Positions 4 through 31,219 of a DNA stretch of 64,000 nt are shown here, one piece after another. The stretch is taken from positions 1-64,000 of the IMG/VR virus record IMGVR_UViG_3300045974_000132. The stretch is one strand, 5' to 3'. How positions within the stretch are numbered: position 1 is the first letter of the stretch; each line of letters starts with the position of its first letter. The notes under the pieces were generated by a model. The model saw nothing but the letters and a program-made list of their open reading frames with translations. It searched no databases and had not been told where the DNA came from. Both the position numbers and the translations under genes were made by a program.

Positions 4-3000
4 ATGCAACCTACTATTGCATTCTCGTTTGCTCTTAATCTTCCGATCAACATCGTGCAATACATTGTTCAAGCTAAGGACAAAGTCAGCCTTGCTTCTT
101 TGAACGTATGGGCATCTGTTTGGGCATCTGCTATGATGAAGCCACCCGGTATTAAGGGTACGGGCTTGCAGACAAACAAGATTCCGCGTTACGTGCTTAT
201 GCCTTCTGCTTCTAGCTACCTATCTAAGAAGCGTGAAGAACTCGGCTTGTACTCAGAGCCAGGCCGTTCAAACAAAGACGGTATATATATCACTGAGCGC
301 GGTAACATTTCTTATCTGCCTAAGCAAACAGAAGCAGTAGAAGAGAATGCCAAGGCTTATGAGAAAGTTCTTGAAGACAGCTTGGCTCTAAGCTATGAGG
401 CAGGTACTCCTCTCATTACTAGCCAAGAAGGTAGTGCTGGTTCGATCTTCGATCTAGCTAGTCCTGAGTATAAGAGTAAGATCAGAATGACCAAGAGCCA
501 GTTACATGGCTTCAAGGGTTGTATGCAGACTTACAATTGGGACTTGAATTGCATTATCACGACTTCTGTTGTCAGCCCTGATCGTTTTGTTAGCCAGAAG
601 CTTGTGGGATGCTCTATTCCTGATGAACTAAACCTTGCCAACTACATGAGGACAGACTTCATGAAGGGCATGTGCAACATGTTCTCAGACTCTACGATTA
701 AAGAGGGTGCAAAGCGCATCAAGCCTGAGCCGAAGCACTTTGCTGATCTGCCTTCTGCTATTACCGATAGTTCCTTGTTCCTTAACTTCTCTCAAGCTTA
801 CAACATGCTTGAGAAGCGCAAACTTGTTCCTGGCTTGAAGGAACTAATCGACCGTTCAATGGCATCTTTGAAGCTCAAGTCACTCCGTGATGAAGAAGTT
901 TCCATGTTTGAAATTGATCGCTTCGATAGCAACAAGACTATTTACGGTAACTTCTTAAAGCCCGATCTTGGCTTTAGCTTAGTCGGTGACTCTGATGCAA
1001 ACAATGCGTCATTGCTTCTACCTAATACAGGTAAGACAATTCTGCACTACTTAACGGTTGTTGCAAATGATGCTCGCGCTCTGGGTAGAAGCAACCTAGC
1101 TGCTTACTGCATCAAGGAGAACGTTGATCCTGCTGATACGGGTCGCTTCTTTGACTCACAGACTCATGCAATCCATGAGTTTGAAAACCTATTTAAGTAT
1201 GTAGGTGGTCAAATATTCCTGCAAGCAATGAAAGCTATTGTTGCCGTATCGTCTAAAGACCTTATGACTATCGGGGAAGAAACTGATCCCAATGATAAGA
1301 ACTCTTTCGCAGGCTTCTCTGCGCTACAGTCAGAAGTTGTTCCGTTCTGCTTGATGTTTAGCAAATACGTTACCGACTTGAAGGAAGCTATCTTCAAGAA
1401 GGCTGAAGAGATTGAAGATACAAACAAGCATCCTAAAGTCTCTGAAGAAGAGTTGAACATTGCAGGTAGTCGTGCCCCGACTGCTAATCGTCCGGGTATG
1501 CAGTTGTTCCCGCACCAAGCAGAGTGTTTGGCAATTCTAAAGAACCATCCTCGCTTTGCAGTGCTTGACATTGCACCAGGTGGCGGGAAATGCCTTGTTG
1601 GAGATAGCTTAGTACCTACTTCTGACGGTATTCTTTCCTTGAAGGAAGTATACGCTCGTTCAGACGTTTCTACTAATAAGCGTGGTTTCCAAGAGTATAT
1701 TACATCTGTTGTATCTCACGAAAATCGTGTAGAGAAAACCGACTTTGCTTACTCAACCGTCGGTATTACGCATAAAGTAAAACTATCTGACGGTACTGTG
1801 ACGCAGGGTTTGCCTGAACATAAGCTATGGGCAGTACCTCTTACGTCTAATGCCCCTGAATTTATTAGGTTGGATAACTTACGTAAAGGAGATTGGCTGC
1901 CCAAAGCTTTAGGTACTGAACTCTATCCTAAGAAGACCCCTATTCTGTCTTTCAATGGACAAAAACATACTCTTACAGAAGAATTAGCTGAGATTTTAGG
2001 CTGGCTAGTGGCAGAAGGTTATGTAGTAAAAGACCGTTGTCACTTTGAACAACATAGTCCTGAAATGATGGCCCGTTATATAAACAAAGCAGAAACTTTG
2101 TTTGGTACAGGCTCCGTAGTTATACGTAAAGGTACGACGACCTCGGCTAAATTCTCAGAGAAAGCTGTGTTTGAATTTGTTCGAGACCTTATGACTTTAG
2201 GAACTTCTGCTTTCAAGGAAGTACCTTTGTGCATTCGTACTGCACCTAAGAAGTATCAACAAGCTTTCTTAAGGTCTCTATTTGAGGGTGACGCTAGTAT
2301 CTATCATGGAAGTCAAGGTAGAAACCAGAGTCGTATTTGGAAGTTTGAGTATTGTACAATAAGTAAGACACTTGTGCACCATGTAAAAGCAATGCTTGAC
2401 AACATGGGTATTCTCACTAGCTTAAAAACAGGCAACGCGTACAAGTCTAATGGGCACGATCACGTTAAACGTGTATATCGCTTGTTTATTAATTGGAGAG
2501 CACTGCCTAAGCTTGCACAAGAAATTGGTTTCCTTAGCACTGCTAAAACGTCTTTGCTAGAAGAAGCTGTTAGTCATGTGGAGTTCGTTTCAACCTCTGC
2601 GCAGCAAACTACAAATACTAAAGTAGGTAGTGCAGAAAATCGTATACCTGGCTACGAGCTAGCAACCTTTGTTAATCTTCGTATTCGTGAAGTTCTTAGC
2701 ACATACACGTATGAAGTACCTAAAACAAAGAACGGCGCAGGGGGCAGGACAGAACCTTGGTCTATTATGAAAGTAATGCGTGATGCAGAGCTAGGCCGTA
2801 AGTCACTACCCGCTTCGTACGGAAATGATGCTACAAATAAATACTCAGTTGAGCGCCTTTTCCGTATAATCGAAGGGGTGCCCAAGGAAGCTAAGAAGGA
2901 GCTGCTTTCTGACTATTATGTTGCACAAGCTATTGATTCCTTAAAATACTTTGTAGCCAACACTTGGGTACAGGTTAAGTCTTCACGCAAAGCAAAAGAA

Positions 3001-6000
3001 GAGCAGGTATATGATATTAGTGTACCGGGCCCGCACTCCTACGTAGTTAATGGCATATATGGCCATAACACGACCTTAGGTATTGCTGACATTTCAATGA
3101 CGTATGCTGACGGATTGATTAAGCGTCCGTTTATCATCTGCCCTAACGGTCTTGTAGGTAACTGGGCTGAAGATATTCACAAGCACATGGAAGGACGTTG
3201 GAACGTAATCCCAGTAACTACTGAGACTTACGGGGCTTGGGGTGATGAACGCCTTACTGAAATGATTAAGAGTGCTCCTACGAATACAGTAGTTGTCGTA
3301 GGTAATAGCTTCTTAGGCAATCGTGGCAAGTTCCAACTGATCTTAGGTAATGCTGTAGAGAACGTTTCTGATTCACTAGAGTTCTGCAAGAAGTTCCATC
3401 CGGATTATATCTTTATTGATGAATCCCATCGGATGCGCAACCTAGGCTCTGGTATTCATAAGATCGTTAAGTCTATGATGCAGATTAGTAGCGTAAAGTA
3501 TGGTCGTATCGGTACAGGTACTTTCATTCAGAACGTTCTGTCGGATGCTGTCGGTCAAACTGCTCTTTACAATGCTCAAGTCTTCCGTACTAAGGAAGAG
3601 TTTGATGCAAGCAACAAGGCTATGATTTCATCTATCGGTGGAGAAGATGTGTATGACTACACACCTGATGCTCCTGCTAAGGTGAAACGTCGTTTAAGTG
3701 AGTTTGCAACAATCATTTCTTACAAGCGTAAGGAATGGGCGTTCATGCTTCCGCTGCCTGTAGAAACGTTTATCTCTGTATCGTTTGATGATGCAGAAGA
3801 CCCTGAAATGGGTCGTGCCCATCGTATGTTCTACGATGCTGTACTGAAACAAACTATGGAAGAACTGAAGACTGACAAGGTACTTCAGAAACTTCTAAAG
3901 GGTAGCTCAGAAGACGACGAAGATGACGATGCTGATGATACGCCTGAAGGTAGCACTCCTGATAGCAAGGATGGAAAAGATCGCACTGTAACCACTGCTG
4001 AAGGTACTAAGATTGACGTTACTGACGGTGATGATGACAGTGATAATCTTGATAAGCTCGAAGCTGCTTTAAATCCTTACTTGCAACGGCTTGAGCGCAT
4101 CCTAACGGATCCGTTAGGTGATGAAGACTTAGCAGAAGTTGCTAAAGAGTTCTTCGGAGAAGCAACCCGTGATACTTTCGTAACACCTAAAGTCTCTAAG
4201 GTAATCGAACGTATCAAGAAGAACTTTGAAAGCAATGAGTGGCGTAAGGGCATGGATATTAAGTCCTCTGACATTGTTGATTTCAATGGCAAATCTTATA
4301 TCTTCAAGTCTGAAGAGCCCATGGGCAAGACAAAGACCAAGTCTCTTATTGCCCCTGACGAAGATACCGAAAACTGGAAACCTCAGTCTAAGGGTAAGGT
4401 ACTAGTCTTCTGTCGCTTTACTCGATCTGTCGATGCTATCTATCGTGCACTGCCTGCTGATCTGAAGAAGCAAGCTGTTGTATTCCATGGTGAAGTCGAA
4501 GGTAACAAGTGGGAGAATCTCGAAGCGTTCAAGAATGATCCTAAGATCAATATTCTGATCGCAAATGAAATGGGTATCTCTGAAGGGCACAATCTTCAGA
4601 TGGCTTCACGCTTCATTCGTGTTGAATCTCCTTGGGCACCGGGTGAGCTTGACCAGTCTTCATCGCGTATCTTCCGCCCTGACGTATCAGGTAAGTATGA
4701 ACGTCAAACAATCTTCCTTGATTGGATTATTTGTGACGGTACGCTAGAAGTTGCGAAGATGGGCCGACTGATTTCTAAGATGCTGCGGAAAGCACAGTTC
4801 GATGAACTGGACAATCCTAAATATTACAAGAATCTCAATCCTTTGAACTTGCCTGTTATTAAGATGTCCCTTGACAACATCAAGACATTGAACAAGATGG
4901 CCGATCTTTGTGCTATTGCAGGCGTAGGGGATACGAAAGAGCCTAATTCCAGTAGCTACATTGGGCAGTACGGTTATCTAGTAGGTGAAATGGCTGAAGA
5001 GTTTCGTGAAATGAAGAAGACGAAACGTGCTTACATGATTGATGTTAAGCCTACTCCGATGCCTGATGATGCTAAGGTGATTGAGTTCACACCGTGGGTG
5101 CCTAATATGAAGGTGCCTGATCGTCATGATGAAGGTTTGCTATCGCTCAAGGGTGTTCTACAAGAAGAGGATCATCCTCTGACTATTGCATTCAAGAAAG
5201 ATAAGCGTGCCTTAAACGGTCAGTTTGTCCGATGTGAGTTCGGCTTAGGTACTATCATAGGGGTATCAACTTCAAAGAATTCTTCTAGTGACGAGGATGA
5301 AGATCCCGGAGTATCTGTTAGTAAAGTGAAGATCGAACTTTCTCAGGGTGGTAAGGTTGAATCTTTGTCTGCTTCAAAGGTATATCTGGCAACTAAGATT
5401 ACCGAAAAGACAAAGAGCTCCATGAATAAGAAAGCTCCGAAGATCACGAAAGAAGATAAGGAACGCACTTCTGGTAATGCTAAGAAGGCTGAAGTCGCGC
5501 TTACTCGTGCTGCTAAACGTGAGAAGGACTTTGTCAAGAAGGTGGCTGATGTTAAGCGTAAGCCTAAAGCTGTTGAAGAGCCTGAAGACGCTTCAGAAGA
5601 AACGATGGACATTTCGTTGTATCCTGTAATCTACAACGAATTCTTGGCGCTGGAAGCAGTACCGGAAGATGCCACTGTATCTCTGAAGCAATACGGCTTT
5701 ACGAAGTTTGGCAACTATGCTTGGCTACCTGTTAAGACTTATGCCAACTTTACGAAAGTGTTGGAGTATATTGAATCGAAATATACCCTAGCTCCTAAGA
5801 CGATTAAGCTCCTAGATAGCTTGCACGATAGCTTCAATAGTGGTCGAGGTCGTAAGTTTGCTGTTGAGCTTGCACCTACTTCAATGCTTCCGCAGTTCTA
5901 TCGTCTCCGTCACACAATGACTGTGATTAAGGACAAGCGTAAGCCTGATCTGAAACTATACCCTGTCATCTTGAATGGTAGCTTGCTGTTGGTTGTAGAT

Positions 6001-6231
6001 ATTGCAACCAATCCTGTAATTCGTAAGATCCTGAACAAGACTATTGTGGGTACTTCACCTGCAGTCAAGTTCCAAGAAGCTGACGGTCTTGAGATTGAGT
6101 TCTTTGATCGTAAGTCTAGCTTGGTTAATAAGGTCAAGGAACTTCGTCAAGCAGGCTTCAATGTTATCAACATTGAGGAGTTGAAAGAAGAAGTGGGCTC
6201 GCTTAATCTGAAGCAAGTTTCAACCAAGTAA
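4..6231 (+). CDS. SNF2/SWI2-type SF2 helicase-like ATPase precursor containing an intein; probably 5'-truncated because the frame is open to base 1
   Basis: Q-motif QLFPHQ, Walker A DIAPGGGK|T (split by intein), motif II IFIDESH, motif III GTGTFIQN, motif IV KVLVFCRF, motifs V/VI EGHNLQ...SPWAPGELDQSSSRIFR. Confidence 0.9.
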   Translation: MQPTIAFSFALNLPINIVQYIVQAKDKVSLASLNVWASVWASAMMKPPGIKGTGLQTNKIPRYVLMPSASSYLSKKREELGLYSEPGRSNKDGIYITERGNISYLPKQTEAVEENAKAYEKVLEDSLALSYEAGTPLITSQEGSAGSIFDLASPEYKSKIRMTKSQLHGFKGCMQTYNWDLNCIITTSVVSPDRFVSQKLVGCSIPDELNLANYMRTDFMKGMCNMFSDSTIKEGAKRIKPEPKHFADLPSAITDSSLFLNFSQAYNMLEKRKLVPGLKELIDRSMASLKLKSLRDEEVSMFEIDRFDSNKTIYGNFLKPDLGFSLVGDSDANNASLLLPNTGKTILHYLTVVANDARALGRSNLAAYCIKENVDPADTGRFFDSQTHAIHEFENLFKYVGGQIFLQAMKAIVAVSSKDLMTIGEETDPNDKNSFAGFSALQSEVVPFCLMFSKYVTDLKEAIFKKAEEIEDTNKHPKVSEEELNIAGSRAPTANRPGMQLFPHQAECLAILKNHPRFAVLDIAPGGGKCLVGDSLVPTSDGILSLKEVYARSDVSTNKRGFQEYITSVVSHENRVEKTDFAYSTVGITHKVKLSDGTVTQGLPEHKLWAVPLTSNAPEFIRLDNLRKGDWLPKALGTELYPKKTPILSFNGQKHTLTEELAEILGWLVAEGYVVKDRCHFEQHSPEMMARYINKAETLFGTGSVVIRKGTTTSAKFSEKAVFEFVRDLMTLGTSAFKEVPLCIRTAPKKYQQAFLRSLFEGDASIYHGSQGRNQSRIWKFEYCTISKTLVHHVKAMLDNMGILTSLKTGNAYKSNGHDHVKRVYRLFINWRALPKLAQEIGFLSTAKTSLLEEAVSHVEFVSTSAQQTTNTKVGSAENRIPGYELATFVNLRIREVLSTYTYEVPKTKNGAGGRTEPWSIMKVMRDAELGRKSLPASYGNDATNKYSVERLFRIIEGVPKEAKKELLSDYYVAQAIDSLKYFVANTWVQVKSSRKAKEEQVYDISVPGPHSYVVNGIYGHNTTLGIADISMTYADGLIKRPFIICPNGLVGNWAEDIHKHMEGRWNVIPVTTETYGAWGDERLTEMIKSAPTNTVVVVGNSFLGNRGKFQLILGNAVENVSDSLEFCKKFHPDYIFIDESHRMRNLGSGIHKIVKSMMQISSVKYGRIGTGTFIQNVLSDAVGQTALYNAQVFRTKEEFDASNKAMISSIGGEDVYDYTPDAPAKVKRRLSEFATIISYKRKEWAFMLPLPVETFISVSFDDAEDPEMGRAHRMFYDAVLKQTMEELKTDKVLQKLLKGSSEDDEDDDADDTPEGSTPDSKDGKDRTVTTAEGTKIDVTDGDDDSDNLDKLEAALNPYLQRLERILTDPLGDEDLAEVAKEFFGEATRDTFVTPKVSKVIERIKKNFESNEWRKGMDIKSSDIVDFNGKSYIFKSEEPMGKTKTKSLIAPDEDTENWKPQSKGKVLVFCRFTRSVDAIYRALPADLKKQAVVFHGEVEGNKWENLEAFKNDPKINILIANEMGISEGHNLQMASRFIRVESPWAPGELDQSSSRIFRPDVSGKYERQTIFLDWIICDGTLEVAKMGRLISKMLRKAQFDELDNPKYYKNLNPLNLPVIKMSLDNIKTLNKMADLCAIAGVGDTKEPNSSSYIGQYGYLVGEMAEEFREMKKTKRAYMIDVKPTPMPDDAKVIEFTPWVPNMKVPDRHDEGLLSLKGVLQEEDHPLTIAFKKDKRALNGQFVRCEFGLGTIIGVSTSKNSSSDEDEDPGVSVSKVKIELSQGGKVESLSASKVYLATKITEKTKSSMNKKAPKITKEDKERTSGNAKKAEVALTRAAKREKDFVKKVADVKRKPKAVEEPEDASEETMDISLYPVIYNEFLALEAVPEDATVSLKQYGFTKFGNYAWLPVKTYANFTKVLEYIESKYTLAPKTIKLLDSLHDSFNSGRGRKFAVELAPTSMLPQFYRLRHTMTVIKDKRKPDLKLYPVILNGSLLLVVDIATNPVIRKILNKTIVGTSPAVKFQEADGLEIEFFDRKSSLVNKVKELRQAGFNVINIEELKEEVGSLNLKQVSTK
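1591..3069 (+). mobile_element. Intein (493 aa) with LAGLIDADG homing endonuclease, inserted in the helicase P-loop
   Basis: N-terminal block CLVGDSLV, C-terminal VYDISV...YVVNGIYGHN followed by Thr as +1 nucleophile. LAGLIDADG-like LAEILGWLVAEG and FLRSLFEGDA, block H ISKTLVHHVKAMLDNMGI. Removal restores GGGKT. Confidence 0.93.
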
Positions 6232-18172: not shown

Positions 18173-18792
18173 TGGAAAAACTAATACTAAAACATTTGCC
18201 TAGAGAACGGGAGAAAGTTCTCACAGCAAGAGGGGTACCGCAAGCTGACTTCATTCACGGTAAGGAGCAATATGATGTTGTTCCTAATTTAGTTAAGTAT
18301 GAAGTAGAACTTGCACGTATGCCTACTAGGGCAGTAGGTACTGCAAAGCAACTGAAAGCACTAGAGTCTATCTGTACAAATCCTTTACGTTCAAGTTACG
18401 TGTTGGGTATTAGTAGCTTTCCTAGTGATGCTCTTGCAAAAGCTCTTGCAATCCATATATTCAATCAATCAATGATTTCATGGCAACGAAGGCATCGTCC
18501 AGGTAGAGTACTTCCTATTTGGCATCGTGTATTCGGAGGCTTCAATGATAATCTTCGTGACAAGCCTATTGAAGAAACACCTAGCTTGTTGGTGTTATCG
18601 AATATCAATGAAGCAAGTAGCTCCTACAAGCTTGAGAAGGTGCGAGACATATTGGAGAAGTATTCTCATATACCGCGCATTGTTGTTTTAAGCGGAGCCG
18701 ACCCTTTGACATTCTTTGCAAACAAATTGTACTGCCCTATCAATGCAGGTATATTGATTGGCCCTACAAATCGTGTTAAGGAAATGGGATGA
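18172..18792 (+). CDS. Degenerate DnaC/IstB-like AAA+ protein (possible helicase loader)
   Basis: Layout S-Y-V-L-G...ALAKALAIHI ... PSLLVLSNI.E.S..K...VRDILEKY...PRIVVLS mirrors the DnaC fold but lacks GKT and the Walker B DD. Confidence 0.5.
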   Translation: MEKLILKHLPREREKVLTARGVPQADFIHGKEQYDVVPNLVKYEVELARMPTRAVGTAKQLKALESICTNPLRSSYVLGISSFPSDALAKALAIHIFNQSMISWQRRHRPGRVLPIWHRVFGGFNDNLRDKPIEETPSLLVLSNINEASSSYKLEKVRDILEKYSHIPRIVVLSGADPLTFFANKLYCPINAGILIGPTNRVKEMG

Positions 18793-19019
18793 CAGACGTT
18801 GACAACTTTCTTAAAGACGTTGCAAAGCAAGGTAGGCTCAAGGAGTTTACGGTAGTGTGTGATGAATCCAATAACACACCTGAAGATATAGATCAACGTA
18901 GGCTTAATGTAGATGTTATTTTTTACGGTTCTTTAGCTGAACACGTTCGCAAGCGGTTGGAAGAATCTACTGATAGGACTGCATCGTATGGCTGCCATAC
19001 CACCGAAGACAAAGTATAA
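18789..19019 (+). CDS. 76 aa protein resembling an isolated tail-sheath C-terminal segment
   Basis: FLKDVAKQGRLKEFTVVCDESNNTPEDIDQRRLNVDVIF aligns ungapped (16/39 identical) with the sheath segment encoded at 26068-26184. Confidence 0.65.
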   Translation: MTDVDNFLKDVAKQGRLKEFTVVCDESNNTPEDIDQRRLNVDVIFYGSLAEHVRKRLEESTDRTASYGCHTTEDKV

Positions 19020-19494
19020 TGCTTTAGTCTTAGACTTCGACGGTGCTCTATTCCCACGAAGATTCTTTTTAACTCCGACGGGTGCTGATCCTGTATTGGT
19101 ACAAGTAATAAATACATTGTGCCAACACTATGATTTCCGAATCGTTATCTCAGCAGGCATGCAAGAACAAGGTATAGATAAGTGTAAAGAAGAGTTAAGC
19201 AAAGCAGGTATTAGTGCAGACTATGTTATGCCTAATAACTGGTCGACTCTAAGCGTAGGCTTTCATATACGCGACCGATACAAGCAGGTTGAACGCTGGT
19301 ACGATCAGTATAAAGATTCAATTGGTAGGATGTTGATCTTTGATGATGAACATTGCCCATTCCAATCGCCTATAGCTGCTTACTGGATGAGGTGTGATGA
19401 AGAACACGGATTACGCTTATTCGATCTTACTACTCTGTACGGTGAATACTCAAAATTAATGGAACATAAAGAAGACATAAATGAAAACAAGTGA
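18988..19494 (+). CDS. HAD-superfamily phosphatase (HAD_SAK-like)
   Basis: Motif I LVLDFDGAL, motif II FRIVISAG, motif IV MLIFDDE; ATAGGA RBS. Confidence 0.75.
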   Translation: MAAIPPKTKYNALVLDFDGALFPRRFFLTPTGADPVLVQVINTLCQHYDFRIVISAGMQEQGIDKCKEELSKAGISADYVMPNNWSTLSVGFHIRDRYKQVERWYDQYKDSIGRMLIFDDEHCPFQSPIAAYWMRCDEEHGLRLFDLTTLYGEYSKLMEHKEDINENK

Positions 19495-20143
19495 TATTGT
19501 AAGGCAGCGTATTCTGGAAGCTAATGCTCCTTTCTTTGCAAATGACAACATCGCAAGCTTTGTAACGCCCGAAGAGTTGGCTGGTATTCAAGAAGAAGTT
19601 GAATTTCATATGGACAATCTACTTCGAGCTTTGGTAATCGACGTTGATAACGACCATAACTCGAACGGAACTGCCAAGCGCGTAGCAAAGATGTTTGTGC
19701 GCGAGTTCTACAAAGGCCGTTACGTTGAAATGCCTAACGTTACTGTCTTTCCTAATGCTAAGAAGATTGACCAACTGTATATCGTTGGCCCTGTTAGCGT
19801 TAAGAGTACGTGCAGCCATCATCTAGTACCTATCGTAGGTAAGGTATGGGTCGGTTGCATTCCGGGCGACGATCTAAGCGGCTTATCGAAGTTTGCTCGT
19901 TTAGCTGAATGGATTTTTCGTCGTCCTCAAATTCAAGAAGAAGCTACCCAACAGTTGGCAGAACTTCTTGAAGAGATTCTCAAGCCTAAAGCTTTAGCTC
20001 TCATTGTCAAAGCACAACATATGTGTATGTGCCATCGTGGTGTAGAAGACCCGGACAGTGAGCATACAACCAGTTACATGGGTGGTGCCTTTAAGCAAGA
20101 TCCGGCACTGCGTATGGAATTCTTGACACTGATGAACAAATGA
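19481..20143 (+). CDS. folE: GTP cyclohydrolase I
   Basis: TAKRVAKMF, VKSTCSHHLVPIVG, GLSKFARL...RRPQIQEEAT, AQHMCMCHRGV (Zn ligands intact). Confidence 0.95.
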   Translation: MKTSDIVRQRILEANAPFFANDNIASFVTPEELAGIQEEVEFHMDNLLRALVIDVDNDHNSNGTAKRVAKMFVREFYKGRYVEMPNVTVFPNAKKIDQLYIVGPVSVKSTCSHHLVPIVGKVWVGCIPGDDLSGLSKFARLAEWIFRRPQIQEEATQQLAELLEEILKPKALALIVKAQHMCMCHRGVEDPDSEHTTSYMGGAFKQDPALRMEFLTLMNK

Positions 20144-21075
20144 TTAGCACACTCACACTGCCGTATTTGACTTGTATTGACCATGCTTACGTGGATGATA
20201 TTGGACGTATTCGTGGTCGTTCATACCATGCTTCCTTCACAGTATCGGGTAAGGTTGATGAAGAAGGTGAGAAGGTTGTTGTAGACTTCTCTAAGGTAAA
20301 GAAGCTCATTAAGTCGATTGTCGATGACCATGAGTACGGATTCGACCACAAGCTTTGGGTTGATTCTAATTGCAAAGAAGATGCAAACCCTAGAATTGCT
20401 ACACCCTTTGCACTTCTAAATATTCCAGAGAATGCAATACGCTCTTTCCCTAAAGCTACACATGTACATGCTTCTTCGGCGTGTTTTATCATAGCCCAGC
20501 ATGTACAGGATGTTCTGCTAAATGTTCACGGTATTGAGGTAGACATTAAGTGTGCCCTAAATACCAGCCCTCTGTTTATTCAAGCAGGTGGTGTCTACGG
20601 AATGTTTAGCTACGTTCATGGCCTGCGCGATAGTTCAGCATACGGTTGTCAGAATCTAGCACATGGACATCTTAGTTATCTGCAATTGATTCCTAAGGTG
20701 GACATTATTCGCATGGTCGTTGATCCTGTTCATTGTGCTGATGAAGATAATGCTTTAACAGCCCTTGATAAAGTATGCAATGAAATCTGCAAAGACCTGG
20801 ACGATACGATTTTCATATACGGTGCTAATGTTTGGACAGCAAGCACTGACGAGGTGTCTATTGCTTATACTTCCAAGTCACGCGGATCTATGGGCGGTAA
20901 GTTCAAGAATAACGAGCGTCAAAAGACGGTAGTTCTTGAAACAGAAACTACTGTTGAATACCTTGCAGAATATATCAATGCTAAGTATGGTGAGCTTTTA
21001 CGTGAAGCCGGCGTTGATAAGTTTATCGTAAGTGAGGGCCTTTCTAAGGGTGTTCTGTTTGAAGTAACGTCTTAA
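20140..21075 (+). CDS. queD: QueD-like 6-carboxytetrahydropterin synthase, tandem T-fold type
   Basis: IDHAY...RGRSY.ASFTVSG...VVDFSKVKK.IK...DHKL and a second half FSYVHGL....YGCQNLAHGH; translationally coupled to folE (ATGA). Confidence 0.75.
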   Translation: MISTLTLPYLTCIDHAYVDDIGRIRGRSYHASFTVSGKVDEEGEKVVVDFSKVKKLIKSIVDDHEYGFDHKLWVDSNCKEDANPRIATPFALLNIPENAIRSFPKATHVHASSACFIIAQHVQDVLLNVHGIEVDIKCALNTSPLFIQAGGVYGMFSYVHGLRDSSAYGCQNLAHGHLSYLQLIPKVDIIRMVVDPVHCADEDNALTALDKVCNEICKDLDDTIFIYGANVWTASTDEVSIAYTSKSRGSMGGKFKNNERQKTVVLETETTVEYLAEYINAKYGELLREAGVDKFIVSEGLSKGVLFEVTS

Positions 21076-21087
21076 GGACATTTCAAA

Positions 21088-21633
21088 ATGGAAATATCAA
21101 GACGCGGGTTTCTAAAGCTATTTGCTACGCTACCCGCTGCTTTTGCTGTAACGCAACTAACACCAGCGTTTGCTAAAATCCCGGACTTAACGCCGATAGT
21201 CGTTCCAGAGACCAAAGAAGACTTTGGATTCTTTGATATATCGGACATTGAGATTAGGTTCTCTGACTTTCGCGTGTATGCTTCGTCTATGAATGTTGTT
21301 CATAATCATGGACCATCCTTCAGAACGCCCTATGAAGTTGTATCGGACGAACGTGGCCAATACTTATACTCAGAACTGCGAATACAAACTACTTCCCTAA
21401 CGGGTAGATGCTTTGCCAATCTAGGTGATAAGCTAAGAACTTGGTTTGAAGCGGCTAGGAATATGGGTCCTCCTGACTCTTATAAGAAAGATGCTGAAAT
21501 CTGGTATAAGGGTGAGCGTATTGCTACCTTAAAAGGCGCCTTCCTTAAGTCAATAGAAGCTCAAATGTTCGGTAATCTGATGAACTTTGATTTTACAATG
21601 AGCTATGATGTGTTGGAACATTTAAATGGATAA
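21088..21633 (+). CDS. Twin-arginine (Tat) signal protein with a T4 gp19-like tail-tube-type domain
   Basis: MEI-SRRGFLK-hydrophobic-AFA signal; C-terminal W...A...G.P.SYKKDAEI....LKGAF..SI.....F.FTMSYD resembles the gp19 family. Signal call is strong, tube call moderate. Confidence 0.6.
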   Translation: MEISRRGFLKLFATLPAAFAVTQLTPAFAKIPDLTPIVVPETKEDFGFFDISDIEIRFSDFRVYASSMNVVHNHGPSFRTPYEVVSDERGQYLYSELRIQTTSLTGRCFANLGDKLRTWFEAARNMGPPDSYKKDAEIWYKGERIATLKGAFLKSIEAQMFGNLMNFDFTMSYDVLEHLNG

Positions 21634-22189
21634 CAAACATTACGGTCTAATTGGGGCCCACCGCGTAGGTAAGACGACTTCTGCTCAGAAGTTTGCAGTA
21701 TCACCTCATATAGCCTACTTACAGATTGATACCAATGCAATCTTTGTAGAGCTTGGCTTCAATCCTAAAGATCAATACGATATTGAAACACGATTGACCA
21801 TCCAAGAGCAATTGATTGAGCGTGTAGAACCTCAGTATCGGGATAACAGTTGCAGCATAACAGATCGTACTCCGATAGACTTCTTGATCTACATGCTTGC
21901 GGATGTTACGCGTGACTTTCCTTCACGCTTGGAAGAACGTTTTGCTGCATATCAAAAGCGGTGCATTGATATGTACTTCCAGTACTTCCAACGAGGTTGT
22001 GTTATACAGCCAGGTATCCCGATAATTGATGTTGCAAAGTCGGCTCCACCTAGTGTTGCTTACATAGCACACCTAAATCATATCGCTGTTGGGCTGGCTA
22101 ACGCTCTCAACATTGATGTAATGCCGATTCATATTCTTGATCTTGAAGAACGTGATGAATATCTAACTGCAATCTTTCTTCCTTATTAA
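21626..22189 (+). CDS. P-loop nucleotide kinase-like protein (dNMP kinase/AAA_28-like)
   Basis: YGLIGAHRVGKTT Walker A; ITDRTPIDFLIY (DR motif of dNMP/TMP kinases). Confidence 0.75.
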   Translation: MDNKHYGLIGAHRVGKTTSAQKFAVSPHIAYLQIDTNAIFVELGFNPKDQYDIETRLTIQEQLIERVEPQYRDNSCSITDRTPIDFLIYMLADVTRDFPSRLEERFAAYQKRCIDMYFQYFQRGCVIQPGIPIIDVAKSAPPSVAYIAHLNHIAVGLANALNIDVMPIHILDLEERDEYLTAIFLPY

Positions 22190-23801: not shown

Positions 23802-24122
23802 ATGGTAGAGGTCTTCAAAGGCCTTACGCAAGAATATAAAGAAATGCTGATGACTCGTTTTAATCCCGAGAGGATTGACGAAGAGTTTAGCCCACATGAA
23901 GTAAGGTTGATTATATTCTTTAACGATTCGCGGGACAGGCAGATTCATTCGCCGGATTTAAGATTTATTTTGTCTGCTCACTTTTCCAATTTTGGCTTTT
24001 TTATACCGTCAGGTAACTCCGTTCTTATTTCGTTTAGATTGAATCCTAAATTTAATAAGTATGATGAACAAGACCTTAGTAAAAAACTTAGTGGGAAAGG
24101 GGCGGGGTATTGTAGCAGTTAA
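23802..24122 (+). CDS. Hypothetical protein
   Basis: ATG at 23802 preceded by GGAG, in frame with the 23748 ORF. Confidence 0.55.
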   Translation: MVEVFKGLTQEYKEMLMTRFNPERIDEEFSPHEVRLIIFFNDSRDRQIHSPDLRFILSAHFSNFGFFIPSGNSVLISFRLNPKFNKYDEQDLSKKLSGKGAGYCSS

Positions 24123-24426
24123 ACGAATTGTAAAAGGCTCCTTGATTGAGTCTTGTCCGGTTGCTCTGTTCTCAGTACCCTTAGGCAGTACTCACATACT
24201 AGAGACATACGCCTTTAGGTGGTCAAAGAATAAAGTAGCTATTGCCTTAGGGAACGGTAGCTTATACAATCACAGTTATACACCCAATGCGGAATACACT
24301 AAAGATATAAAGAATAAGGTATTACTGGTGTATGCTTTAAGAACCATCCTACCGGGTGAAGAAATATGTTTCAACTACAACGGGCATCCAGATAATAAGG
24401 CACCGTTGTGGTTTAAAGTAAAATGA
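24061..24426 (+). CDS. SET-domain protein (putative lysine methyltransferase)
   Basis: GKGRGIVAVKRIVKGSLI, SLYNHSYTPNA, YALRTILPGEEICFNY: GxG, NHS and ELxFxY motifs all present. Confidence 0.9.
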   Translation: MMNKTLVKNLVGKGRGIVAVKRIVKGSLIESCPVALFSVPLGSTHILETYAFRWSKNKVAIALGNGSLYNHSYTPNAEYTKDIKNKVLLVYALRTILPGEEICFNYNGHPDNKAPLWFKVK

Positions 24427-24579: not shown

Positions 24580-26274
24580 ATGGGTCTTCCATCCTCCCCA
24601 GGTAGTTATGTGATAGAGCGTGATCTATCACAGCGAGTTCGTGCTGTATCCACATCAATCGGTGCTATCGTCGGAGCCTCCAAGAAGGGCCCGATAATGA
24701 CACCTACACTGGTTACAAACAAACAAGAATTTATTGAGACATTCGGACCTCCCGATTGGCGTTTTAGCTTGATGCACTATGCGGCTCTAAAGTTTCTTGA
24801 GAATAGTAGCCAGCTATTAGTTACACGGGTCATCAATGATGATACCAATCACGGCCCTGTGCCGTTAACAGCCGGAGCTTTCTACTCTGTAGATTCAGTT
24901 ACGGCTGTAGCACCGCGTCCTACTCTGTCAGTATTTGACGATGCTAACGGTAATACTCTGGGTAAGTTTGATCCGTTCAATACGTATTCATTCAACCCAA
25001 ATCAACCGGGTATTGCAAACGTCTTATTCTTCATATGTGCTGTCGATCCGGGTGACTGGAATAACACTCTATACATTGAAGTACGCCCAGCTTACAAGGC
25101 AGGCTTGTCTTCATTCGATGAAACATATGATGATCCGTATTCATTCTGGATTGATGTATATGTTAATCATGACAACCCGCGTGATAAGCCTGTTGAGTCA
25201 TGGCTTGTAAAGCGCAACTCAGAGATTAACGGTTTCGGCAATCAGATGTTCATGGAAGATGTTATCAATAAAGCTTCCAAGTATATTCGTGTTCGCAATA
25301 ATGAGTTTGCTCCTACAACTGTTAAGGTTGTAGAACCTGCTAAGGTATTCCTTGAAGGTGGCACTAACGGTCACTATCTAGCTTTCGGTCAAGTAATGAG
25401 AGCATGGGATCTTTATAAGGATACTGAGCATATCAATGTCAATATCTTGATTCAAGGTGGTGCTCCGATCGGCATGAGCAACTTGCAAGATATTTGCGAC
25501 ATCCAACGTAAAATGGCAATCATTGCTGAAGAACGTATGGATGCTGTTGCGATTCTTGACATCCCTTCACCGGAACAAGAAACTGCCCGTGCTGTTGCAT
25601 ATGCTGTTCAAGAGCTAAACCTTGATAGTAGCTATGCTGCCATCTATACTTGTGACATACGAGTACCGGATGTGTACAACGACATGGAAGTCTGGGTTCC
25701 GCCTTCTGGTTATGTTGCTGCAAACTGTGCATTGACTGACGAACAATATGAAGTCTGGTTCTCACCGGCTGGTATGTATCGTGGTCGCATGGATGAAGTC
25801 AACAAATCAAAATACATTTACAACCAAGGTCATCGAGACGCCCTCGACTACGTAAATGTTAACGCTATTCGTTATTTCCCTAAAGGCCAAGGCTGGCGTA
25901 TTTGGGGATCGAATACCCTACAGAGTATGGCGTCTGCTCTGTCGGATCTGAATGTTCGTCGTCTGATGAACTTCATTGAAAAGTCCGTACGCATTGCCAA
26001 TATGTATAGCGTGTTTGACCCGAATGACCAAATTCTTCGTAGTCGGGTTACATCAATCATTGAACGTTTCTTATCTCCAATTAAGAACGCCGGTGGTCTA
26101 TATTGGTTCCAAGTTATTTGTGATGACAGCAATAACACAAGCGACACCATTGCAGCAGGCATTCTTGTTATTGATGCTTACTTCGATCCCGTTATTACTG
26201 CAAAACGAATTCATCTTCGTGCCAACTTAATGGCAACCGGCGCTGACTTTAAGTCCTATCTTATCAATAAATAA
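24580..26274 (+). CDS. Contractile tail sheath protein (T4 gp18-like)
   Basis: SPGSYVIERDLS, GAIVGASKKGP...LVTNK.EF.ETFG.P, WVPPSG.VAA, WFSPAG..RG, NVRRLMNFIEK, FQVICDDSNNT; GGAG RBS. Confidence 0.93.
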   Translation: MGLPSSPGSYVIERDLSQRVRAVSTSIGAIVGASKKGPIMTPTLVTNKQEFIETFGPPDWRFSLMHYAALKFLENSSQLLVTRVINDDTNHGPVPLTAGAFYSVDSVTAVAPRPTLSVFDDANGNTLGKFDPFNTYSFNPNQPGIANVLFFICAVDPGDWNNTLYIEVRPAYKAGLSSFDETYDDPYSFWIDVYVNHDNPRDKPVESWLVKRNSEINGFGNQMFMEDVINKASKYIRVRNNEFAPTTVKVVEPAKVFLEGGTNGHYLAFGQVMRAWDLYKDTEHINVNILIQGGAPIGMSNLQDICDIQRKMAIIAEERMDAVAILDIPSPEQETARAVAYAVQELNLDSSYAAIYTCDIRVPDVYNDMEVWVPPSGYVAANCALTDEQYEVWFSPAGMYRGRMDEVNKSKYIYNQGHRDALDYVNVNAIRYFPKGQGWRIWGSNTLQSMASALSDLNVRRLMNFIEKSVRIANMYSVFDPNDQILRSRVTSIIERFLSPIKNAGGLYWFQVICDDSNNTSDTIAAGILVIDAYFDPVITAKRIHLRANLMATGADFKSYLINK

Positions 26275-28333: not shown

Positions 28334-31219
28334 ATGCCTATTGCAATTGCCTCTTATTTCATCCCACGCGCAGGTAATAGCTACGCTCTGATGGAAGACG
28401 TATATATTAAGGGCGGCTTCCGTATCGTATCAGACGTTAATGCGCGTAACGCTATTGATGCGTCTGCTCTTAAAGAAGGTATGTGGGTTGTTACTCGTGT
28501 GGATGGTAAAGTCTATACACTAGGTAGCGATCTTGTAACATGGACTGAAAAGTCCTTTGCTGGTAATATTGGTCCTGTAGGTCCCACTGGCCTTCAAGGG
28601 GTTGCGGGTACTCAAGGCCTACCTGGCGTTGCTGGACCGATGGGACCTACTGGTTACACTGGTCAGCAAGGCTACACGGGTGCTCAAGGTAATACTGGGC
28701 CCGTCGGCCCCACTGGTACTACAGGAACTACTGGTAGCACTGGACCCGTCGGTCCTACAGGTGCTCAAGGGGCAACTGGTGCCAATGGTTATACTGGTCC
28801 CGTCGGGCCTACGGGTTCCGGCGGCCCTCAGGGGGCAACTGGTTCTCAGGGTGACTTAGGTCCGATTGGTCCCACAGGTAGTCAGGGTATCAAGGGTGAC
28901 ACTGGCTCAACAGGCAGTACTGGACCCGTCGGTCCTACTGGTATCCAAGGTGACTTAGGCCCTGTTGGACCTACTGGTCTTCAAGGCAGTACAGGCTTAA
29001 CGGGTTCTCCTGGAGATACAGGTCCTGTCGGTCCTACTGGCTTTCAGGGTGATACAGGTCCCGTTGGTCCTACTGGATTCCAAGGCGTCCAAGGCAATCT
29101 AGGGCCTGTCGGGCCTACTGGCCCACAGGGTGTTCAAGGTATCCAAGGTAATGCTGGTGTTGTCGGAGATACAGGTCCGATTGGTCCCACAGGTATCCAA
29201 GGTGAATTAGGTCCCGTTGGGCCTACTGGTACTCAGGGTATCAAGGGTGACTTAGGGGATGCTGGCCCTGTTGGTCCTACTGGCGCAACTGGTGCTAAGG
29301 GTGACTCAGGCACGGGTATAGTCTATCAAGGCATATGGGCTGCAGGTGAGTATGCTGCTGACTCTTCTGTTCTGGCCCCATCTAGTGCTAATCCTGCTGT
29401 AAACTCTATCTGGATTTTAGCTAGTGCAAGTTCATACAACTCTACCTTAGAGCCTTCTTCTGATCTTACTCATTGGGTTGAATATACTTCTGTTCAAGGC
29501 CCAGCTGGTGTAGACGGTGCACCTGGCGTTGCTGGTCCTGTAGGCCCTACAGGGGTTGCTGGATCTGTTGGCGCAACTGGTTCAACTGGACCCGTCGGTC
29601 CTACTGGTCTTCAAGGCTTAACAGGTCCCGTTGGTCCTACTGGAGCTATAGGTCTTCAAGGTGTCCAGGGTGTTCAAGGTATTGATGGTCCTGTCGGTCC
29701 TACTGGTAGTGAAGGTACTCAAGGTAGTACTGGCCCAATTGGACCTACGGGTACTCAAGGTGCAACAGGCAGCACTGGTAGTGTAGGGCCCGTCGGACCC
29801 ACCGGACAACAAGGTACTACAGGCCTAACCGGTCCTGTCGGTCCTACTGGTGTTCAAGGCAATATCGGTCTTACAGGAACTACTGGTGATACAGGCCCGA
29901 TCGGCCCGACAGGCCCACAGGGTGCCACTGGGCCTGCTGGCCCCACAGGAGTTCAGGGTAATACAGGTATCCAAGGTGTCGTCGGCCCCGTTGGGCCTAC
30001 TGGTGTTCAAGGCACTGCTGGTGATGTCGGTCCTGTTGGACCTACTGGTAGCATAGGTCTTACTGGACCAGTCGGACCCACAGGTGTTCAAGGCGTTGCA
30101 GGTACTGACGGCTTAACAGGTCCCGTTGGTCCTACTGGTACGCAAGGTAGTACGGGTGTTGCAGGGCCCGTTGGCCCAACAGGTGTTGCAGGATCCGCTG
30201 GCCCTGTGGGTCCCACAGGTGTTCAAGGTAGTACAGGGGTTACTGGTAGTGTCGGTCCTGTTGGACCTACTGGTAATGCTGGAGCAGCAGGCTCAACTGG
30301 CCCCGTAGGACCAACTGGCGTCGCAGGTAGCCTAGGTCCTGTAGGCCCAACAGGTAGTCAGGGTGTTGCAGGTACTACTGGAACTACAGGTAGTACTGGA
30401 CCAGTAGGCCCAACAGGCGTTGCTGGTTCAACTGGCCCTGTTGGACCTACTGGTCTTCAAGGCCTTGCTGGTAGTACTGGTCCCGTCGGCCCTACAGGCC
30501 TTCAAGGAACCACAGGTAATACGGGTGCCACTGGTAATACGGGGCCTGTAGGTCCTACTGGAAACACAGGTAGTATCGGTTTAACAGGTCCTGTAGGTCC
30601 CACTGGCACTCAAGGTGCTACGGGTACTACAGGTAGCGTTGGCCCCGCTGGACCTACAGGCCCACAGGGTACTTCTTCTTTGTGGCGTGAAGGTGCTGTT
30701 GTTCCTGCAAGCGGCTTAGGTGTTGACAACGATCTATACTTGAATACTGCAACTTCTGACGTATATCAGAAGCAATCAGGTGCTTGGGCATTGGTCGCAA
30801 ACATTAAGGGTGCTCAGGGTGCTAGTTATGATCCTAACACTACTATCTTGTCACTGCCCTACGACATTTCGATGTTCGTCTATGGTAACATGGATGCTGC
30901 TAGTACAACTGTTGCTGAGTTTGTTGCACCGCGTAAGATTTCGTTGAAACAGAACTTAACAGGAAGCTTGGCTTACGCGAAGTCTGCCCCGTCGAATTCT
31001 GTCTCATACGCAATCAATGTTAACGGTGTCAATAAGGGTAGCGTAAACTTCGGTATCGGTTCTACTATAGGTACTTTCACATGGGCAACAGGCTTAAACT
31101 TGCTAGTGGGTGATCTCCTTGAAATCGTTACTCCTGCTTCAGTAGAACCTGCTATCGCAAACGTAACAATTTGTTTAGTGGGTGTAGCACAAGCTCCTAA
31201 CACTGCCATGCTTCCTTAA
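28334..31219 (+). CDS. Collagen-like (Gly-X-Y) fibre protein
   Basis: Two long Gly-X-Y tracts (about 28562-29317 and 29498-30672) dominated by GPVGPTG, flanked by globular N- and C-terminal domains. Confidence 0.9.

What the first reader, a model, noticed from the sequence alone, without database searches (positions are those of the whole stretch)
21088..21633. Twin-arginine export signal fused to a tail-tube-like domain
The N-terminus is a perfect Tat consensus (S-R-R-G-F-L-K, hydrophobic core, A-F-A cleavage site). The C-terminal half, TWFEAARNMGPPDSYKKDAEIWYKGERIATLKGAFLKSIEAQMFGNLMNFDFTMSYD, follows the T4 gp19-family pattern W...A...G.P..YKK.A.(I/V)....(L/I)KG.(F/W)...(I/V)....F..T...D. 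Tail tubes assemble in the cytoplasm, so a folded tube subunit sent to the periplasm is unexpected. With the sheath fragment at 18789 in the same operon, this suggests a repurposed tail-mimic module. Inferred roles: superinfection exclusion by capping incoming tubes or occupying their periplasmic/inner-membrane partner, a channel-forming ring, or a decoy. This is my top candidate for an undescribed system.
Basis: partly seen in the sequence, partly recalled or inferred. Interest (0 to 1): 0.82.

Follow-up and report, generated by a model that had tools for sequence, protein, structure and literature searches.

The report
Phage tube-like protein with export signal
A giant phage that already has normal tail-tube genes carries an extra small gene for a tail-tube-shaped protein with a conserved twin-arginine export signal, so the protein probably acts in the host cell envelope, which has not been described for this fold; what it does there is unknown.

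Summary
ORF 21088..21633 (+, 181 aa) is a real, conserved gene.

**Export signal.** Residues 1-29 form a textbook twin-arginine (Tat) signal: SRRGFLK, a moderately hydrophobic core, then AFA|K. It reaches NCBIfam's TIGR01409 cut-off. It is the best-conserved part of the protein in the only two homologues found among billions of proteins.

**Fold.** Residues ~53-181 are predicted by two AlphaFold runs and the ESM Atlas to adopt the tail-tube/Hcp fold. Nearly all top Foldseek hits are tube or Hcp proteins. Sequence similarity to gp19-type tubes is collinear but not significant.

**Not the virion tube.** The same 286-kb contig encodes a canonical capsid, sheath-2, tube, tube module about 68 kb away. 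The Tat gene is therefore an extra, non-virion copy of the fold. It sits in a replication/nucleotide-metabolism block and is translationally coupled to a QueD-like gene upstream and a P-loop kinase-like gene downstream.

**Function.** Untested. My best inference is a periplasmic tube mimic that interferes with incoming tube-based injection machines (superinfection exclusion). Rivals are a Tat carrier for a partner protein, a membrane-anchored form, a minor virion protein, and a cytoplasmic decoy.

I rate it a new variant of a known kind, of moderately high interest.

The parts
21074..21078 (+). Shine-Dalgarno-like AAGGA, 9 nt upstream of the ATG; overlaps the TAA stop (21073-21075) of the upstream QueD-like gene
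   Evidence: Read directly from the sequence. Equivalent TAAGGG and TAAGGAG sites are found in L001 and L002.
21088..21174 (+). Tat-type signal peptide, residues 1-29. The twin-arginine motif S4-K10 is at 21097-21117, the h-region spans L11-V21, and the predicted signal-peptidase I site A27-F28-A29|K30 is at 21166-21174.
   Evidence: TIGR01409 scores 16.9 bits (cut-off 16.7). The motif positions are invariant in 3 homologues. This is the most conserved segment of the protein.
21175..21243 (+). Linker, residues 30-52. It is Pro/Thr/acidic-rich, predicted disordered, and poorly conserved.
   Evidence: pLDDT is below 50 in both models. Identity to the two homologues is 43% and 10%.
21244..21630 (+). 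Tube/Hcp-fold domain, residues 53-181: three strands, a variable loop (residues 74-93), a long helix (residues ~106-125), then four strands. It contains W119, the PPDSYKKDAE motif and the C-terminal FxFxxSYD motif.
   Evidence: AF2 models. Foldseek against PDB and BFVD. ESM Atlas. Collinear hhalign alignment to the phage's own tube families.
21626..22189 (+). Downstream P-loop kinase-like gene (AAA_28 / thymidylate-kinase-like). Its ATG overlaps the Tat gene's last codons (AATGGATAA) and its SD lies inside the LE codons. The overlap is conserved in all three contigs.
20140..21075 (+). Upstream QueD/PTPS-like gene (311 aa); conserved neighbour in all three contigs
   Evidence: PF01242 E=5.7e-7 and TIGR03367 E=1.7e-7. 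phrog_14221 E=8e-42. Synteny.
19481..20143 (+). GTP cyclohydrolase I (FolE), same gene array
   Evidence: PF01227 E=3.9e-46.
18789..19019 (+). 76-aa ORF resembling the last ~67 residues of a tail sheath (C-terminal domain), same gene array, 2 kb upstream
   Evidence: phrog_10581 E=5e-10. BLASTP to the phage's sheath-1 gives 38% over 42 aa (E=2e-7), and to sheath-2 gives 44% over 36 aa.
24580..26274 (+). Full-length tail sheath-1 (564 aa), 3 kb downstream; context only
   Evidence: phrog_23 E=1.6e-92. It is 43% identical to PaBG gp273.

Best explanation
**Shown by computation.**
- The gene encodes an accessory, non-virion protein of 181 aa.
- It has a conserved twin-arginine signal peptide (residues 1-29), a flexible linker (30-52), and a ~130-residue domain predicted to have the contractile-tail tube / Hcp fold.
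- The phage's real tube genes lie elsewhere on the contig.
- This gene sits in a replication/nucleotide-metabolism gene array and is translationally coupled to its neighbours.

**Inferred from how Tat substrates behave.**
- The protein folds in the cytoplasm.
- The host TatABC translocase exports it to the periplasm.
- It is cleaved after A-F-A, giving a 17.5-kDa acidic protein.

**Inferred from the fold (weakest step).**
- In the envelope it forms a tube-like ring, or docks as a tube-subunit mimic.
- It docks onto something that normally binds tube rings: the tip or hub of an incoming contractile tail, a tailocin or a T6SS tube, or their envelope partner.
- It thereby protects the infected cell from secondary injection (superinfection exclusion or envelope protection).
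For: **Tat signal.**
- Strict consensus, h-region and AxA site are read directly from the sequence.
- TIGR01409 scores 16.9 bits, at or above its 16.7 cut-off.
- The motif positions are invariant across homologues at 63% and 28-30% identity.
- The signal is more conserved than the core or the linker.
- There are no strict motifs in 5190 ORFs of related phages.

**Fold.**
- Two AF2 models and an independent ESMFold model in the Atlas all retrieve tube, Hcp or eCIS tube proteins.
- The mature length of 152 aa and pI of 4.6-5.2 are typical of tube subunits.
- hhalign puts W, AR, Y-K-x-D-A and the C-terminal F-x-F-x-x-x-Y-D in register with the phage's own gp19-like tubes.

**Extra copy, not the virion tube.**
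- The same contig (L093) carries MCP, sheath-2, a gp075-like tube and a gp074-like tube.

**Context.**
- The QueD-like, Tat-tube, kinase order and the stop/start overlaps are conserved in three contigs.
- Against L002 it is the most divergent gene of the block: 28% identity versus 43-83% for its neighbours. That fits a host- or competitor-facing protein.

**Precedents (my own knowledge).**
- Exported phage proteins that block entry at the envelope include T4 Sp, TP-J34 Ltp and T5 Llp.
- A periplasmic bacterial factor that blocks phage DNA entry is described in PMC13128918.
Against: - No export, cleavage, oligomer or phenotype data exist.
- SignalP and TatP could not be run.
- Pfam TAT_signal is below threshold, and TIGR01409 is below threshold for two of the three homologues.
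- The structural models are only medium confidence (pLDDT 52.6 and 69.4; TM 0.4-0.55).
- No tube family HMM matches.
- A ring with an open lumen is not an obvious plug.
- The accelerated divergence is seen in only one of two comparisons.
- The host is unknown, so a Tat system in it is assumed from relatives that infect Pseudomonas and Erwinia.
- The tight coupling to FolE, QueD-like and kinase genes has no place in the exclusion model.
Confidence: 0.4

Rival explanations
1. Tat carrier or periplasmic Hcp-like chaperone. The signal-bearing tube-fold ring carries a signal-less partner across the membrane by the Tat 'hitchhiker' route, or binds a ligand or protein in the periplasm as Hcp rings bind effectors. 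The partner could be the co-translated QueD-like enzyme or the kinase-like protein. This would link the gene to the pterin/7-deazapurine genes beside it.
For: - The QueD-like, Tat-tube, kinase order and the translational coupling are conserved in all three contigs.
- FolE and an HAD phosphatase lie in the same array.
- Tat exports folded complexes, and Hcp rings hold cargo in their lumen (my own knowledge).
Against: - There is no evidence of interaction.
- Only three closely related phages are known, so conserved order may just reflect recent common descent.
- QueD/FolE products are normally used in the cytoplasm.
- No periplasmic role for them in phages is known to me.
Confidence: 0.13
2. Membrane-anchored form. 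The N-terminal segment is not cleaved and acts as a signal-anchor. It holds the tube-fold domain at the inner membrane on the periplasmic side, for example as a docking or blocking site at the point of DNA entry, or as part of the lysis machinery.
For: - The hydrophobic N-terminus is more conserved than is usual for cleaved signals: 79% and 52% identity, against 65% and 29% for the core.
- A 23-residue flexible linker follows it.
Against: - The invariant T-P-A-F-A with small residues at -3 and -1 and Pro at -5 is a classical signal-peptidase I site.
- The h-region is short (11-19 uncharged residues) and only moderately hydrophobic.
Confidence: 0.12
3. Minor virion tail protein. It would be a tube-family paralogue such as a tube initiator, terminator or completion protein, with an N-terminus that resembles a Tat signal by accident or serves as a propeptide.
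For: - The fold is that of tube, tube-initiator and terminator proteins. Foldseek hits include neck and cap chains and a 'tail completion protein'.
- Sheath-1 lies 3 kb downstream.
- This phage group duplicates tail genes: it has two sheaths and two tubes.
Against: - The full Tat consensus is conserved at 28% overall identity, and no such motif occurs in 5190 related ORFs.
- The canonical tube pair, with a T4_baseplate-like gene next to it, lies in the structural module elsewhere.
- PaBG, Lu11 and 80 related loci have no homologue.
- The gene sits among replication and nucleotide-metabolism genes.
Confidence: 0.1
4. Cytoplasmic decoy for host defences that sense tail-tube proteins (as DSR2 does). 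It would be made early and soak up or mis-trigger the sensor.
For: - It has a tube fold.
- It sits in a replication/nucleotide-metabolism gene block, not among the late structural genes.
- A DSR2-tube complex (8ygc) appears among the weak Foldseek hits.
- It diverges fast.
Against: - A conserved export signal makes no sense for a cytoplasmic decoy.
- No PADLOC or other anti-defence signal was found.
Confidence: 0.06

Closest known systems
T4 gp19-type / PaBG-type myophage tail tube proteins (Pfam PF06841 Phage_T4_gp19, PF23849 Phage_TTP_2)
   Same: - Predicted fold and size: the mature protein is 152 aa, against 164-189 aa for these tubes.
- Acidic pI.
- The same order of features in register: a helix, then a Y-K-x-D motif, then strands, then a C-terminal F-x-x-x-Y/F-D motif.
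   Different: - It has an N-terminal Tat signal and a linker.
- No HMM membership: no PF06841 or PF23849 hit; hhalign probability 1-3%.
- It lies outside the tail module.
- The phage already has two canonical tubes.
Hcp (TssD) of type VI secretion and eCIS/PVC/AFP tube proteins
   Same: - Same fold family by Foldseek and the Atlas.
- Hcp also works outside a virion, and its ring can bind cargo.
   Different: - Hcp leaves the cell by T6SS firing, has no signal peptide, and is encoded in T6SS clusters.
- No sequence similarity was detected.
Bacterial Tat substrates (TIGR01409 / PF10518 signal)
   Same: S/T-R-R-x-F-L-K motif, weakly hydrophobic h-region, AxA site, and a basic c-region residue in one homologue.
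   Different: - Typical substrates are cofactor-containing redox enzymes, amidases or phospholipases.
- No tube-fold Tat substrate, and no such phage-encoded substrate, turned up in my literature searches.
Exported phage superinfection-exclusion proteins (T4 Sp, T5 Llp, phi80 Cor, TP-J34 Ltp); comparison from my own knowledge
   Same: They are small phage-encoded proteins sent to the envelope, made outside the structural module, and act on incoming phage at the periplasm or membrane.
   Different: - Those use Sec or lipoprotein signals and unrelated folds.
- An exclusion function for this protein is only inferred.

Membership tests
Tat (twin-arginine) signal peptide | Consensus S/T-R-R-x-F-L-K near the N-terminus | tested here: met
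   S4-R-R-G-F-L-K10 in P0001, T-R-R-G-L-L-K in P0002 and S-R-R-S-F-L-K in P0003.
Tat (twin-arginine) signal peptide | Uncharged, moderately hydrophobic h-region followed by an A-x-A signal-peptidase site | tested here: met
   There are 19 uncharged residues after K10. Mean Kyte-Doolittle hydropathy is 1.8-2.2. T-P-A-F-A is invariant at residues 25-29.
Tat (twin-arginine) signal peptide | Curated HMM score above threshold (TIGR01409 / PF10518) | tested here: inconclusive
   TIGR01409 scores 16.9 bits against a 16.7 cut-off for P0001, 12.8 for P0003, and gives no hit for P0002. PF10518 scores 14.6 bits against 22.7.
Tat (twin-arginine) signal peptide | TatABC-dependent export and cleavage | not testable with these tools
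   This needs fractionation in wild-type versus tatC cells and an RR->KK mutant. SignalP and TatP were not available.
Contractile-tail tube / Hcp superfamily (PF06841, PF23849, PF05638) | Family HMM match | tested here: not met
   No tube family appears at E<=0.1 in Pfam or PHROGs. hhalign to the phage's own tube families gives E 0.02-0.04 and probability 1-3%.
Contractile-tail tube / Hcp superfamily (PF06841, PF23849, PF05638) | Tube fold (beta-sandwich with one long helix) | tested here: met
This is a predicted model only: pLDDT 69.4, pTM 0.64. BFVD and the Atlas agree.
Contractile-tail tube / Hcp superfamily (PF06841, PF23849, PF05638) | Encoded next to sheath and baseplate genes and used as the virion tube | tested here: not met
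   The canonical sheath-2, tube, tube module is at L093:14544-18234, which is contig ~88.7-92.4 kb. This gene lies among FolE, QueD-like and kinase genes.
Contractile-tail tube / Hcp superfamily (PF06841, PF23849, PF05638) | Hexameric ring that stacks into a tube | not testable with these tools
   No multimer prediction or experiment was available.
Phage superinfection-exclusion proteins | Expression protects the cell from secondary infection at the entry step | not testable with these tools
   This needs plating and adsorption/DNA-entry assays in a laboratory host.

The most novel reading that the evidence does not exclude
A jumbo phage has copied the tail-tube fold, put a Tat signal on it, and sends the folded subunit or ring into the periplasm of the cell it infects. 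There it acts as a structural mimic that neutralises incoming tube-based injection devices: superinfecting myophages, R-type tailocins or T6SS. This would be the first exported 'tail-part decoy', and the first tube/Hcp-fold protein that works in the periplasm from the inside.
Probability: 0.25. Interest if true: 0.85.

Novelty: new variant of a known kind. Interest (0 to 1): 0.62.

Why it matters
Tube and Hcp proteins are known only as cytoplasmically assembled parts of injection machines. A version that the Tat pathway exports in folded form would place this fold in a new compartment. It would also imply a new kind of phage accessory function at the envelope, whether exclusion, protection from tailocins or T6SS, or cargo carriage.

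The hypothesis is cheap to test, because a single RR->KK mutation or a tatC host gives a clean control. If exclusion is confirmed, it would show that phages recycle their own structural folds as decoys against competitors.

The family is extremely rare, with three members among billions of proteins. It may therefore be a recent, lineage-specific invention, not a widespread system.

Tried and rejected
**Homologue searches**
- megablast of the block and tblastn of the protein against 50,697 phage records found no match.
- The word-indexed search and the exhaustive profile search of 1.84 billion representatives found only two homologues.
- A metagenome scan found nothing further. The IMG/VR scan returned only the window's own contig.

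**Solved structures and defence families**
- A PDB sequence search gave only noise.
- PADLOC gave nothing for the gene or its neighbours.

**Paralogues and the real tube**
- A search for a paralogue in the window, in PaBG and in L093 with the family HMM found none.
- I considered that the gene might be the phage's only tube. I rejected this after locating the canonical module on the same contig.
  - Three attempts failed to recover it.
  - The last large protein search listed no tube from a 286,393-bp contig.
  - An MCP-anchored scan then fetched L093.
- I considered PaBG gp272 ('structural tail protein') as the local tube. I rejected this because it shares only a fibre-type N-terminal domain with ORF 26611.

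**Other checks**
- I considered a T-fold enzyme, given the FolE and QueD neighbours. I rejected this because no T-fold structure appears among the Foldseek hits.
- The promoter/terminator scan and the composition profile gave nothing above background and no sign of a foreign island.
- Literature searches for Tat-exported tube or Hcp proteins, or for Tat-dependent phage exclusion proteins, found no precedent.

Full report
**1. What is in the sequence**

The window is the first 64 kb of IMG/VR contig IMGVR_UViG_3300045974_000132 (286,393 bp), so window and contig coordinates coincide.

An AAGGA Shine-Dalgarno sequence at 21074-21078 sits 9 nt before the ATG and overlaps the TAA stop of the upstream gene. 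The last codons overlap the ATG of the downstream gene (AATGGATAA). They also contain that gene's GGAA/GGAG Shine-Dalgarno sequence. Both arrangements are conserved in the two other contigs that carry a homologue. No downstream in-frame start would keep the domain intact, and all three homologues are 181 aa. Translation therefore starts upstream of the signal.

**2. The N-terminal signal**

The N-terminus is MEISRRGFLKLFATLPAAFAVTQLTPAFA|K.
- It fits the Tat consensus S/T-R-R-x-F-L-K.
- A 19-residue uncharged stretch follows, of moderate hydrophobicity (mean Kyte-Doolittle 1.8).
- It has Pro at -4 and A-F-A at -3 to -1.

The family models give a borderline result. NCBIfam TIGR01409 scores 16.9 bits, just above its 16.7 cut-off. 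P0003 scores 12.8 and P0002 gives no hit. Pfam PF10518 scores 14.6 bits, below its 22.7 cut-off.

The stronger argument is conservation.
- M1, R5, R6, L9, K10, L15, P16, V21 and T25-P-A-F-A29 are invariant in homologues that are 63% and 28-30% identical overall.
- The signal is 79% and 52% identical in those two homologues. The folded core is 65% and 29%, and the linker 43% and 10%.
- The most distant homologue also has a Lys in the c-region. From my own knowledge this is a typical Sec-avoidance feature.
- The strict motif occurs in no other ORF of the window. It occurs in none of 5190 ORFs in 1.65 Mb of related jumbo-phage loci.
- There is no Cys, so this is not a lipoprotein signal.

I conclude that a functional Tat-type signal is very likely. 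SignalP and TatP were not available, and export itself is untested.

**3. The C-terminal domain**

No Pfam, PHROG, NCBIfam or PDB sequence search identifies the mature part. The evidence for the fold comes from predicted structures.
- An AlphaFold2 model of the full protein from two sequences was poor (pLDDT 52.6).
- A model of residues 30-181 from three sequences was better (pLDDT 69.4, pTM 0.64, core blocks 78-87).
- The second model's topology is three strands, a disordered loop, one long helix, then four strands.
- Foldseek against the PDB returns, for both models, tail-tube, eCIS/PVC/AFP tube and Hcp superfamily chains.
- BFVD gives the same picture.
- The ESM Atlas holds an independent ESMFold model (pLDDT 0.64). 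Its nearest neighbours by structure and by language-model features are gp19, Phage_TTP_2, Phi812 tube, Hcp and TssD clusters.
- With the commoner tube and Hcp families masked, the next Atlas neighbours are mostly further tail-tube and other phage tail families. They also include a TAT_signal cluster and a periplasmic hydrogenase small subunit.

hhalign aligns residues ~107-181 collinearly with both tube families of this phage lineage. In that alignment W119, A123-R124, Y132-K-K-D-A136 and F169..Y173-D174 sit opposite conserved tube positions. The scores are only E 0.02-0.04 and probability 1-3%.

The fold assignment is therefore well supported for a prediction. Family membership by sequence is not met.

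**4. It is not the phage's tube**

By sheath and polymerase similarity, the nearest cultured relatives are Pseudomonas phages PaBG and NCTB (43%) and Lu11 (37%). PaBG has two sheaths (PMC7412058). Its RefSeq record places two tube genes (gp075, gp074) directly after one of its annotated sheath genes, gp076, near the major capsid gene.

Pattern scans with tube alignments did not recover the window's contig. The last big protein search listed no tube from a 286,393-bp contig. A scan anchored on a broad capsid alignment then fetched contig 85,812-106,903 as L093. L093 carries the following:
- a capsid gene, 54% identical to PaBG gp080
- sheath-2 (529 aa)
- a GIY-YIG endonuclease
- a gp075-like tube (185 aa, 43% identical)
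- a gp074-like tube (HMM E=1.7e-35)
- a gp073-like gene

Both tubes hit PF06841 weakly, and neither has a signal peptide. The phage therefore has a complete canonical tube set at about 88.7-89.9 kb. The Tat gene is a third, divergent copy of the fold.

**5. Context**

Window 1-18.8 kb is syntenic with PaBG: lysozyme, Pol I, clamp, UvsW helicase and gp275. In PaBG a single gene (gp274) separates gp275 from sheath-1. This phage instead has a 5.7-kb co-directional block with overlaps or tiny gaps. In order, the block contains:
- a 76-aa sheath C-terminal fragment
- an HAD phosphatase
- FolE
- a 311-aa QueD/PTPS-like protein
- the Tat protein
- a P-loop AAA_28/thymidylate-kinase-like protein
- small ORFs
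- an HNH endonuclease
- a SET-domain protein

GC content is uniform. Consensus promoter and terminator hits do not exceed shuffles.

The order from the QueD-like gene through the sheath is conserved in L002, and the QueD-like, Tat, kinase trio is conserved in L001. Against L002 the Tat protein is the most diverged gene of the block: 28% identity, versus 43-83% for its neighbours and 83% for the sheath. Against L001 it is no more diverged than its neighbours.

**6. Rarity**

Two homologues exist among 5.8 billion clusters and 1.84 billion representatives. There are none in 50,697 phage genomes, none in other IMG/VR contigs, and none in JGI metagenome contigs.

**7. Interpretation**

Three points are shown by computation: a conserved Tat-type signal, a predicted tube/Hcp fold, and an accessory status outside the virion module. 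Export of a folded protein and cleavage at K30 are inferred from established Tat biology.

The function is the weakest step. I commit to a periplasmic tube mimic that interferes with tube-based injection into the infected cell. The reasons are:
- The fold's known partners are tube ends, hubs and sheaths.
- The protein is sent to the compartment that incoming tails cross.
- It is encoded among replication and nucleotide-metabolism genes, not late structural genes.
- It diverges quickly in one lineage.
- Exported phage exclusion proteins are an established class.

I put about 0.25-0.3 on that specific role and 0.4 on the whole statement. The rivals are:
- A Tat carrier or Hcp-like chaperone tied to the coupled QueD-like and kinase genes.
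- An uncleaved membrane-anchored form.
- A minor virion protein.
- A cytoplasmic decoy for tube-sensing defences. The signal contradicts this one.

**8. Verdict**

The functional half is untested.

I found no precedent for a Tat-targeted tube/Hcp-fold protein in the literature searched. It is best classed as a new variant of a known kind: the tube/Hcp fold combined with a known export signal. It is of moderately high interest and easy to test.

Noticed in passing
window 18789-19019 (+): An intact 76-aa ORF reproduces the last ~67 residues (C-terminal domain) of a tail sheath. It is 38% identical to sheath-1 and 44% to sheath-2 over 36-42 aa. Its ATG overlaps the stop of the preceding gene, and its end overlaps the HAD gene by 31 nt. 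It could be a relic of a sheath duplication or rearrangement, or an expressed 'handshake-domain' fragment.
   Followed up: partly
window 4-6231 (+): A 2075-aa SNF2-type helicase is interrupted by an intein with a LAGLIDADG homing-endonuclease domain (residues ~581-1022).
   Followed up: no
window 19481-21075 (+): FolE (GTP cyclohydrolase I) lies next to a 311-aa QueD/PTPS-like protein carrying a C-x4-HGH motif, with an HAD phosphatase upstream and a P-loop kinase-like gene downstream. No QueC, QueE or DpdA was seen in the ORFs I scanned, so the product (a pterin or a 7-deazapurine precursor) is unclear.
   Followed up: partly
window 24061-24426 (+): A SET-domain (protein lysine methyltransferase-like) gene lies just upstream of sheath-1 and is conserved in L002.
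   Followed up: no
L093:16282-17007 (contig ~89.9-90.6 kb): A GIY-YIG homing-endonuclease-like gene is inserted between sheath-2 and the first tube gene. PaBG has no gene at that position.
   Followed up: no
window 21600-21633 and L001/L002 equivalents: The invariant C-terminal L-E-x-L-N-G of the Tat protein coincides with the Shine-Dalgarno sequence (GGAG/GGAA) and the ATG of the downstream kinase-like gene. Part of that conservation is therefore nucleotide-level constraint, not protein function.
   Followed up: yes
window 28334-31219 (+) and L002:6053-8077: Long collagen-like (G-x-y repeat) tail-fibre genes lie downstream of sheath-1. Several fibre genes share a common N-terminal attachment domain with PaBG gp270-gp272.
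   Followed up: partly
L003:10984-11817 (PaBG gp274): The PaBG gene occupying the position of this phage's inserted block gives weak hits to a T6SS IglI-family model (E=0.008) and to PADLOC JukB (E=0.004). Both are far below threshold and probably noise.
   Followed up: no
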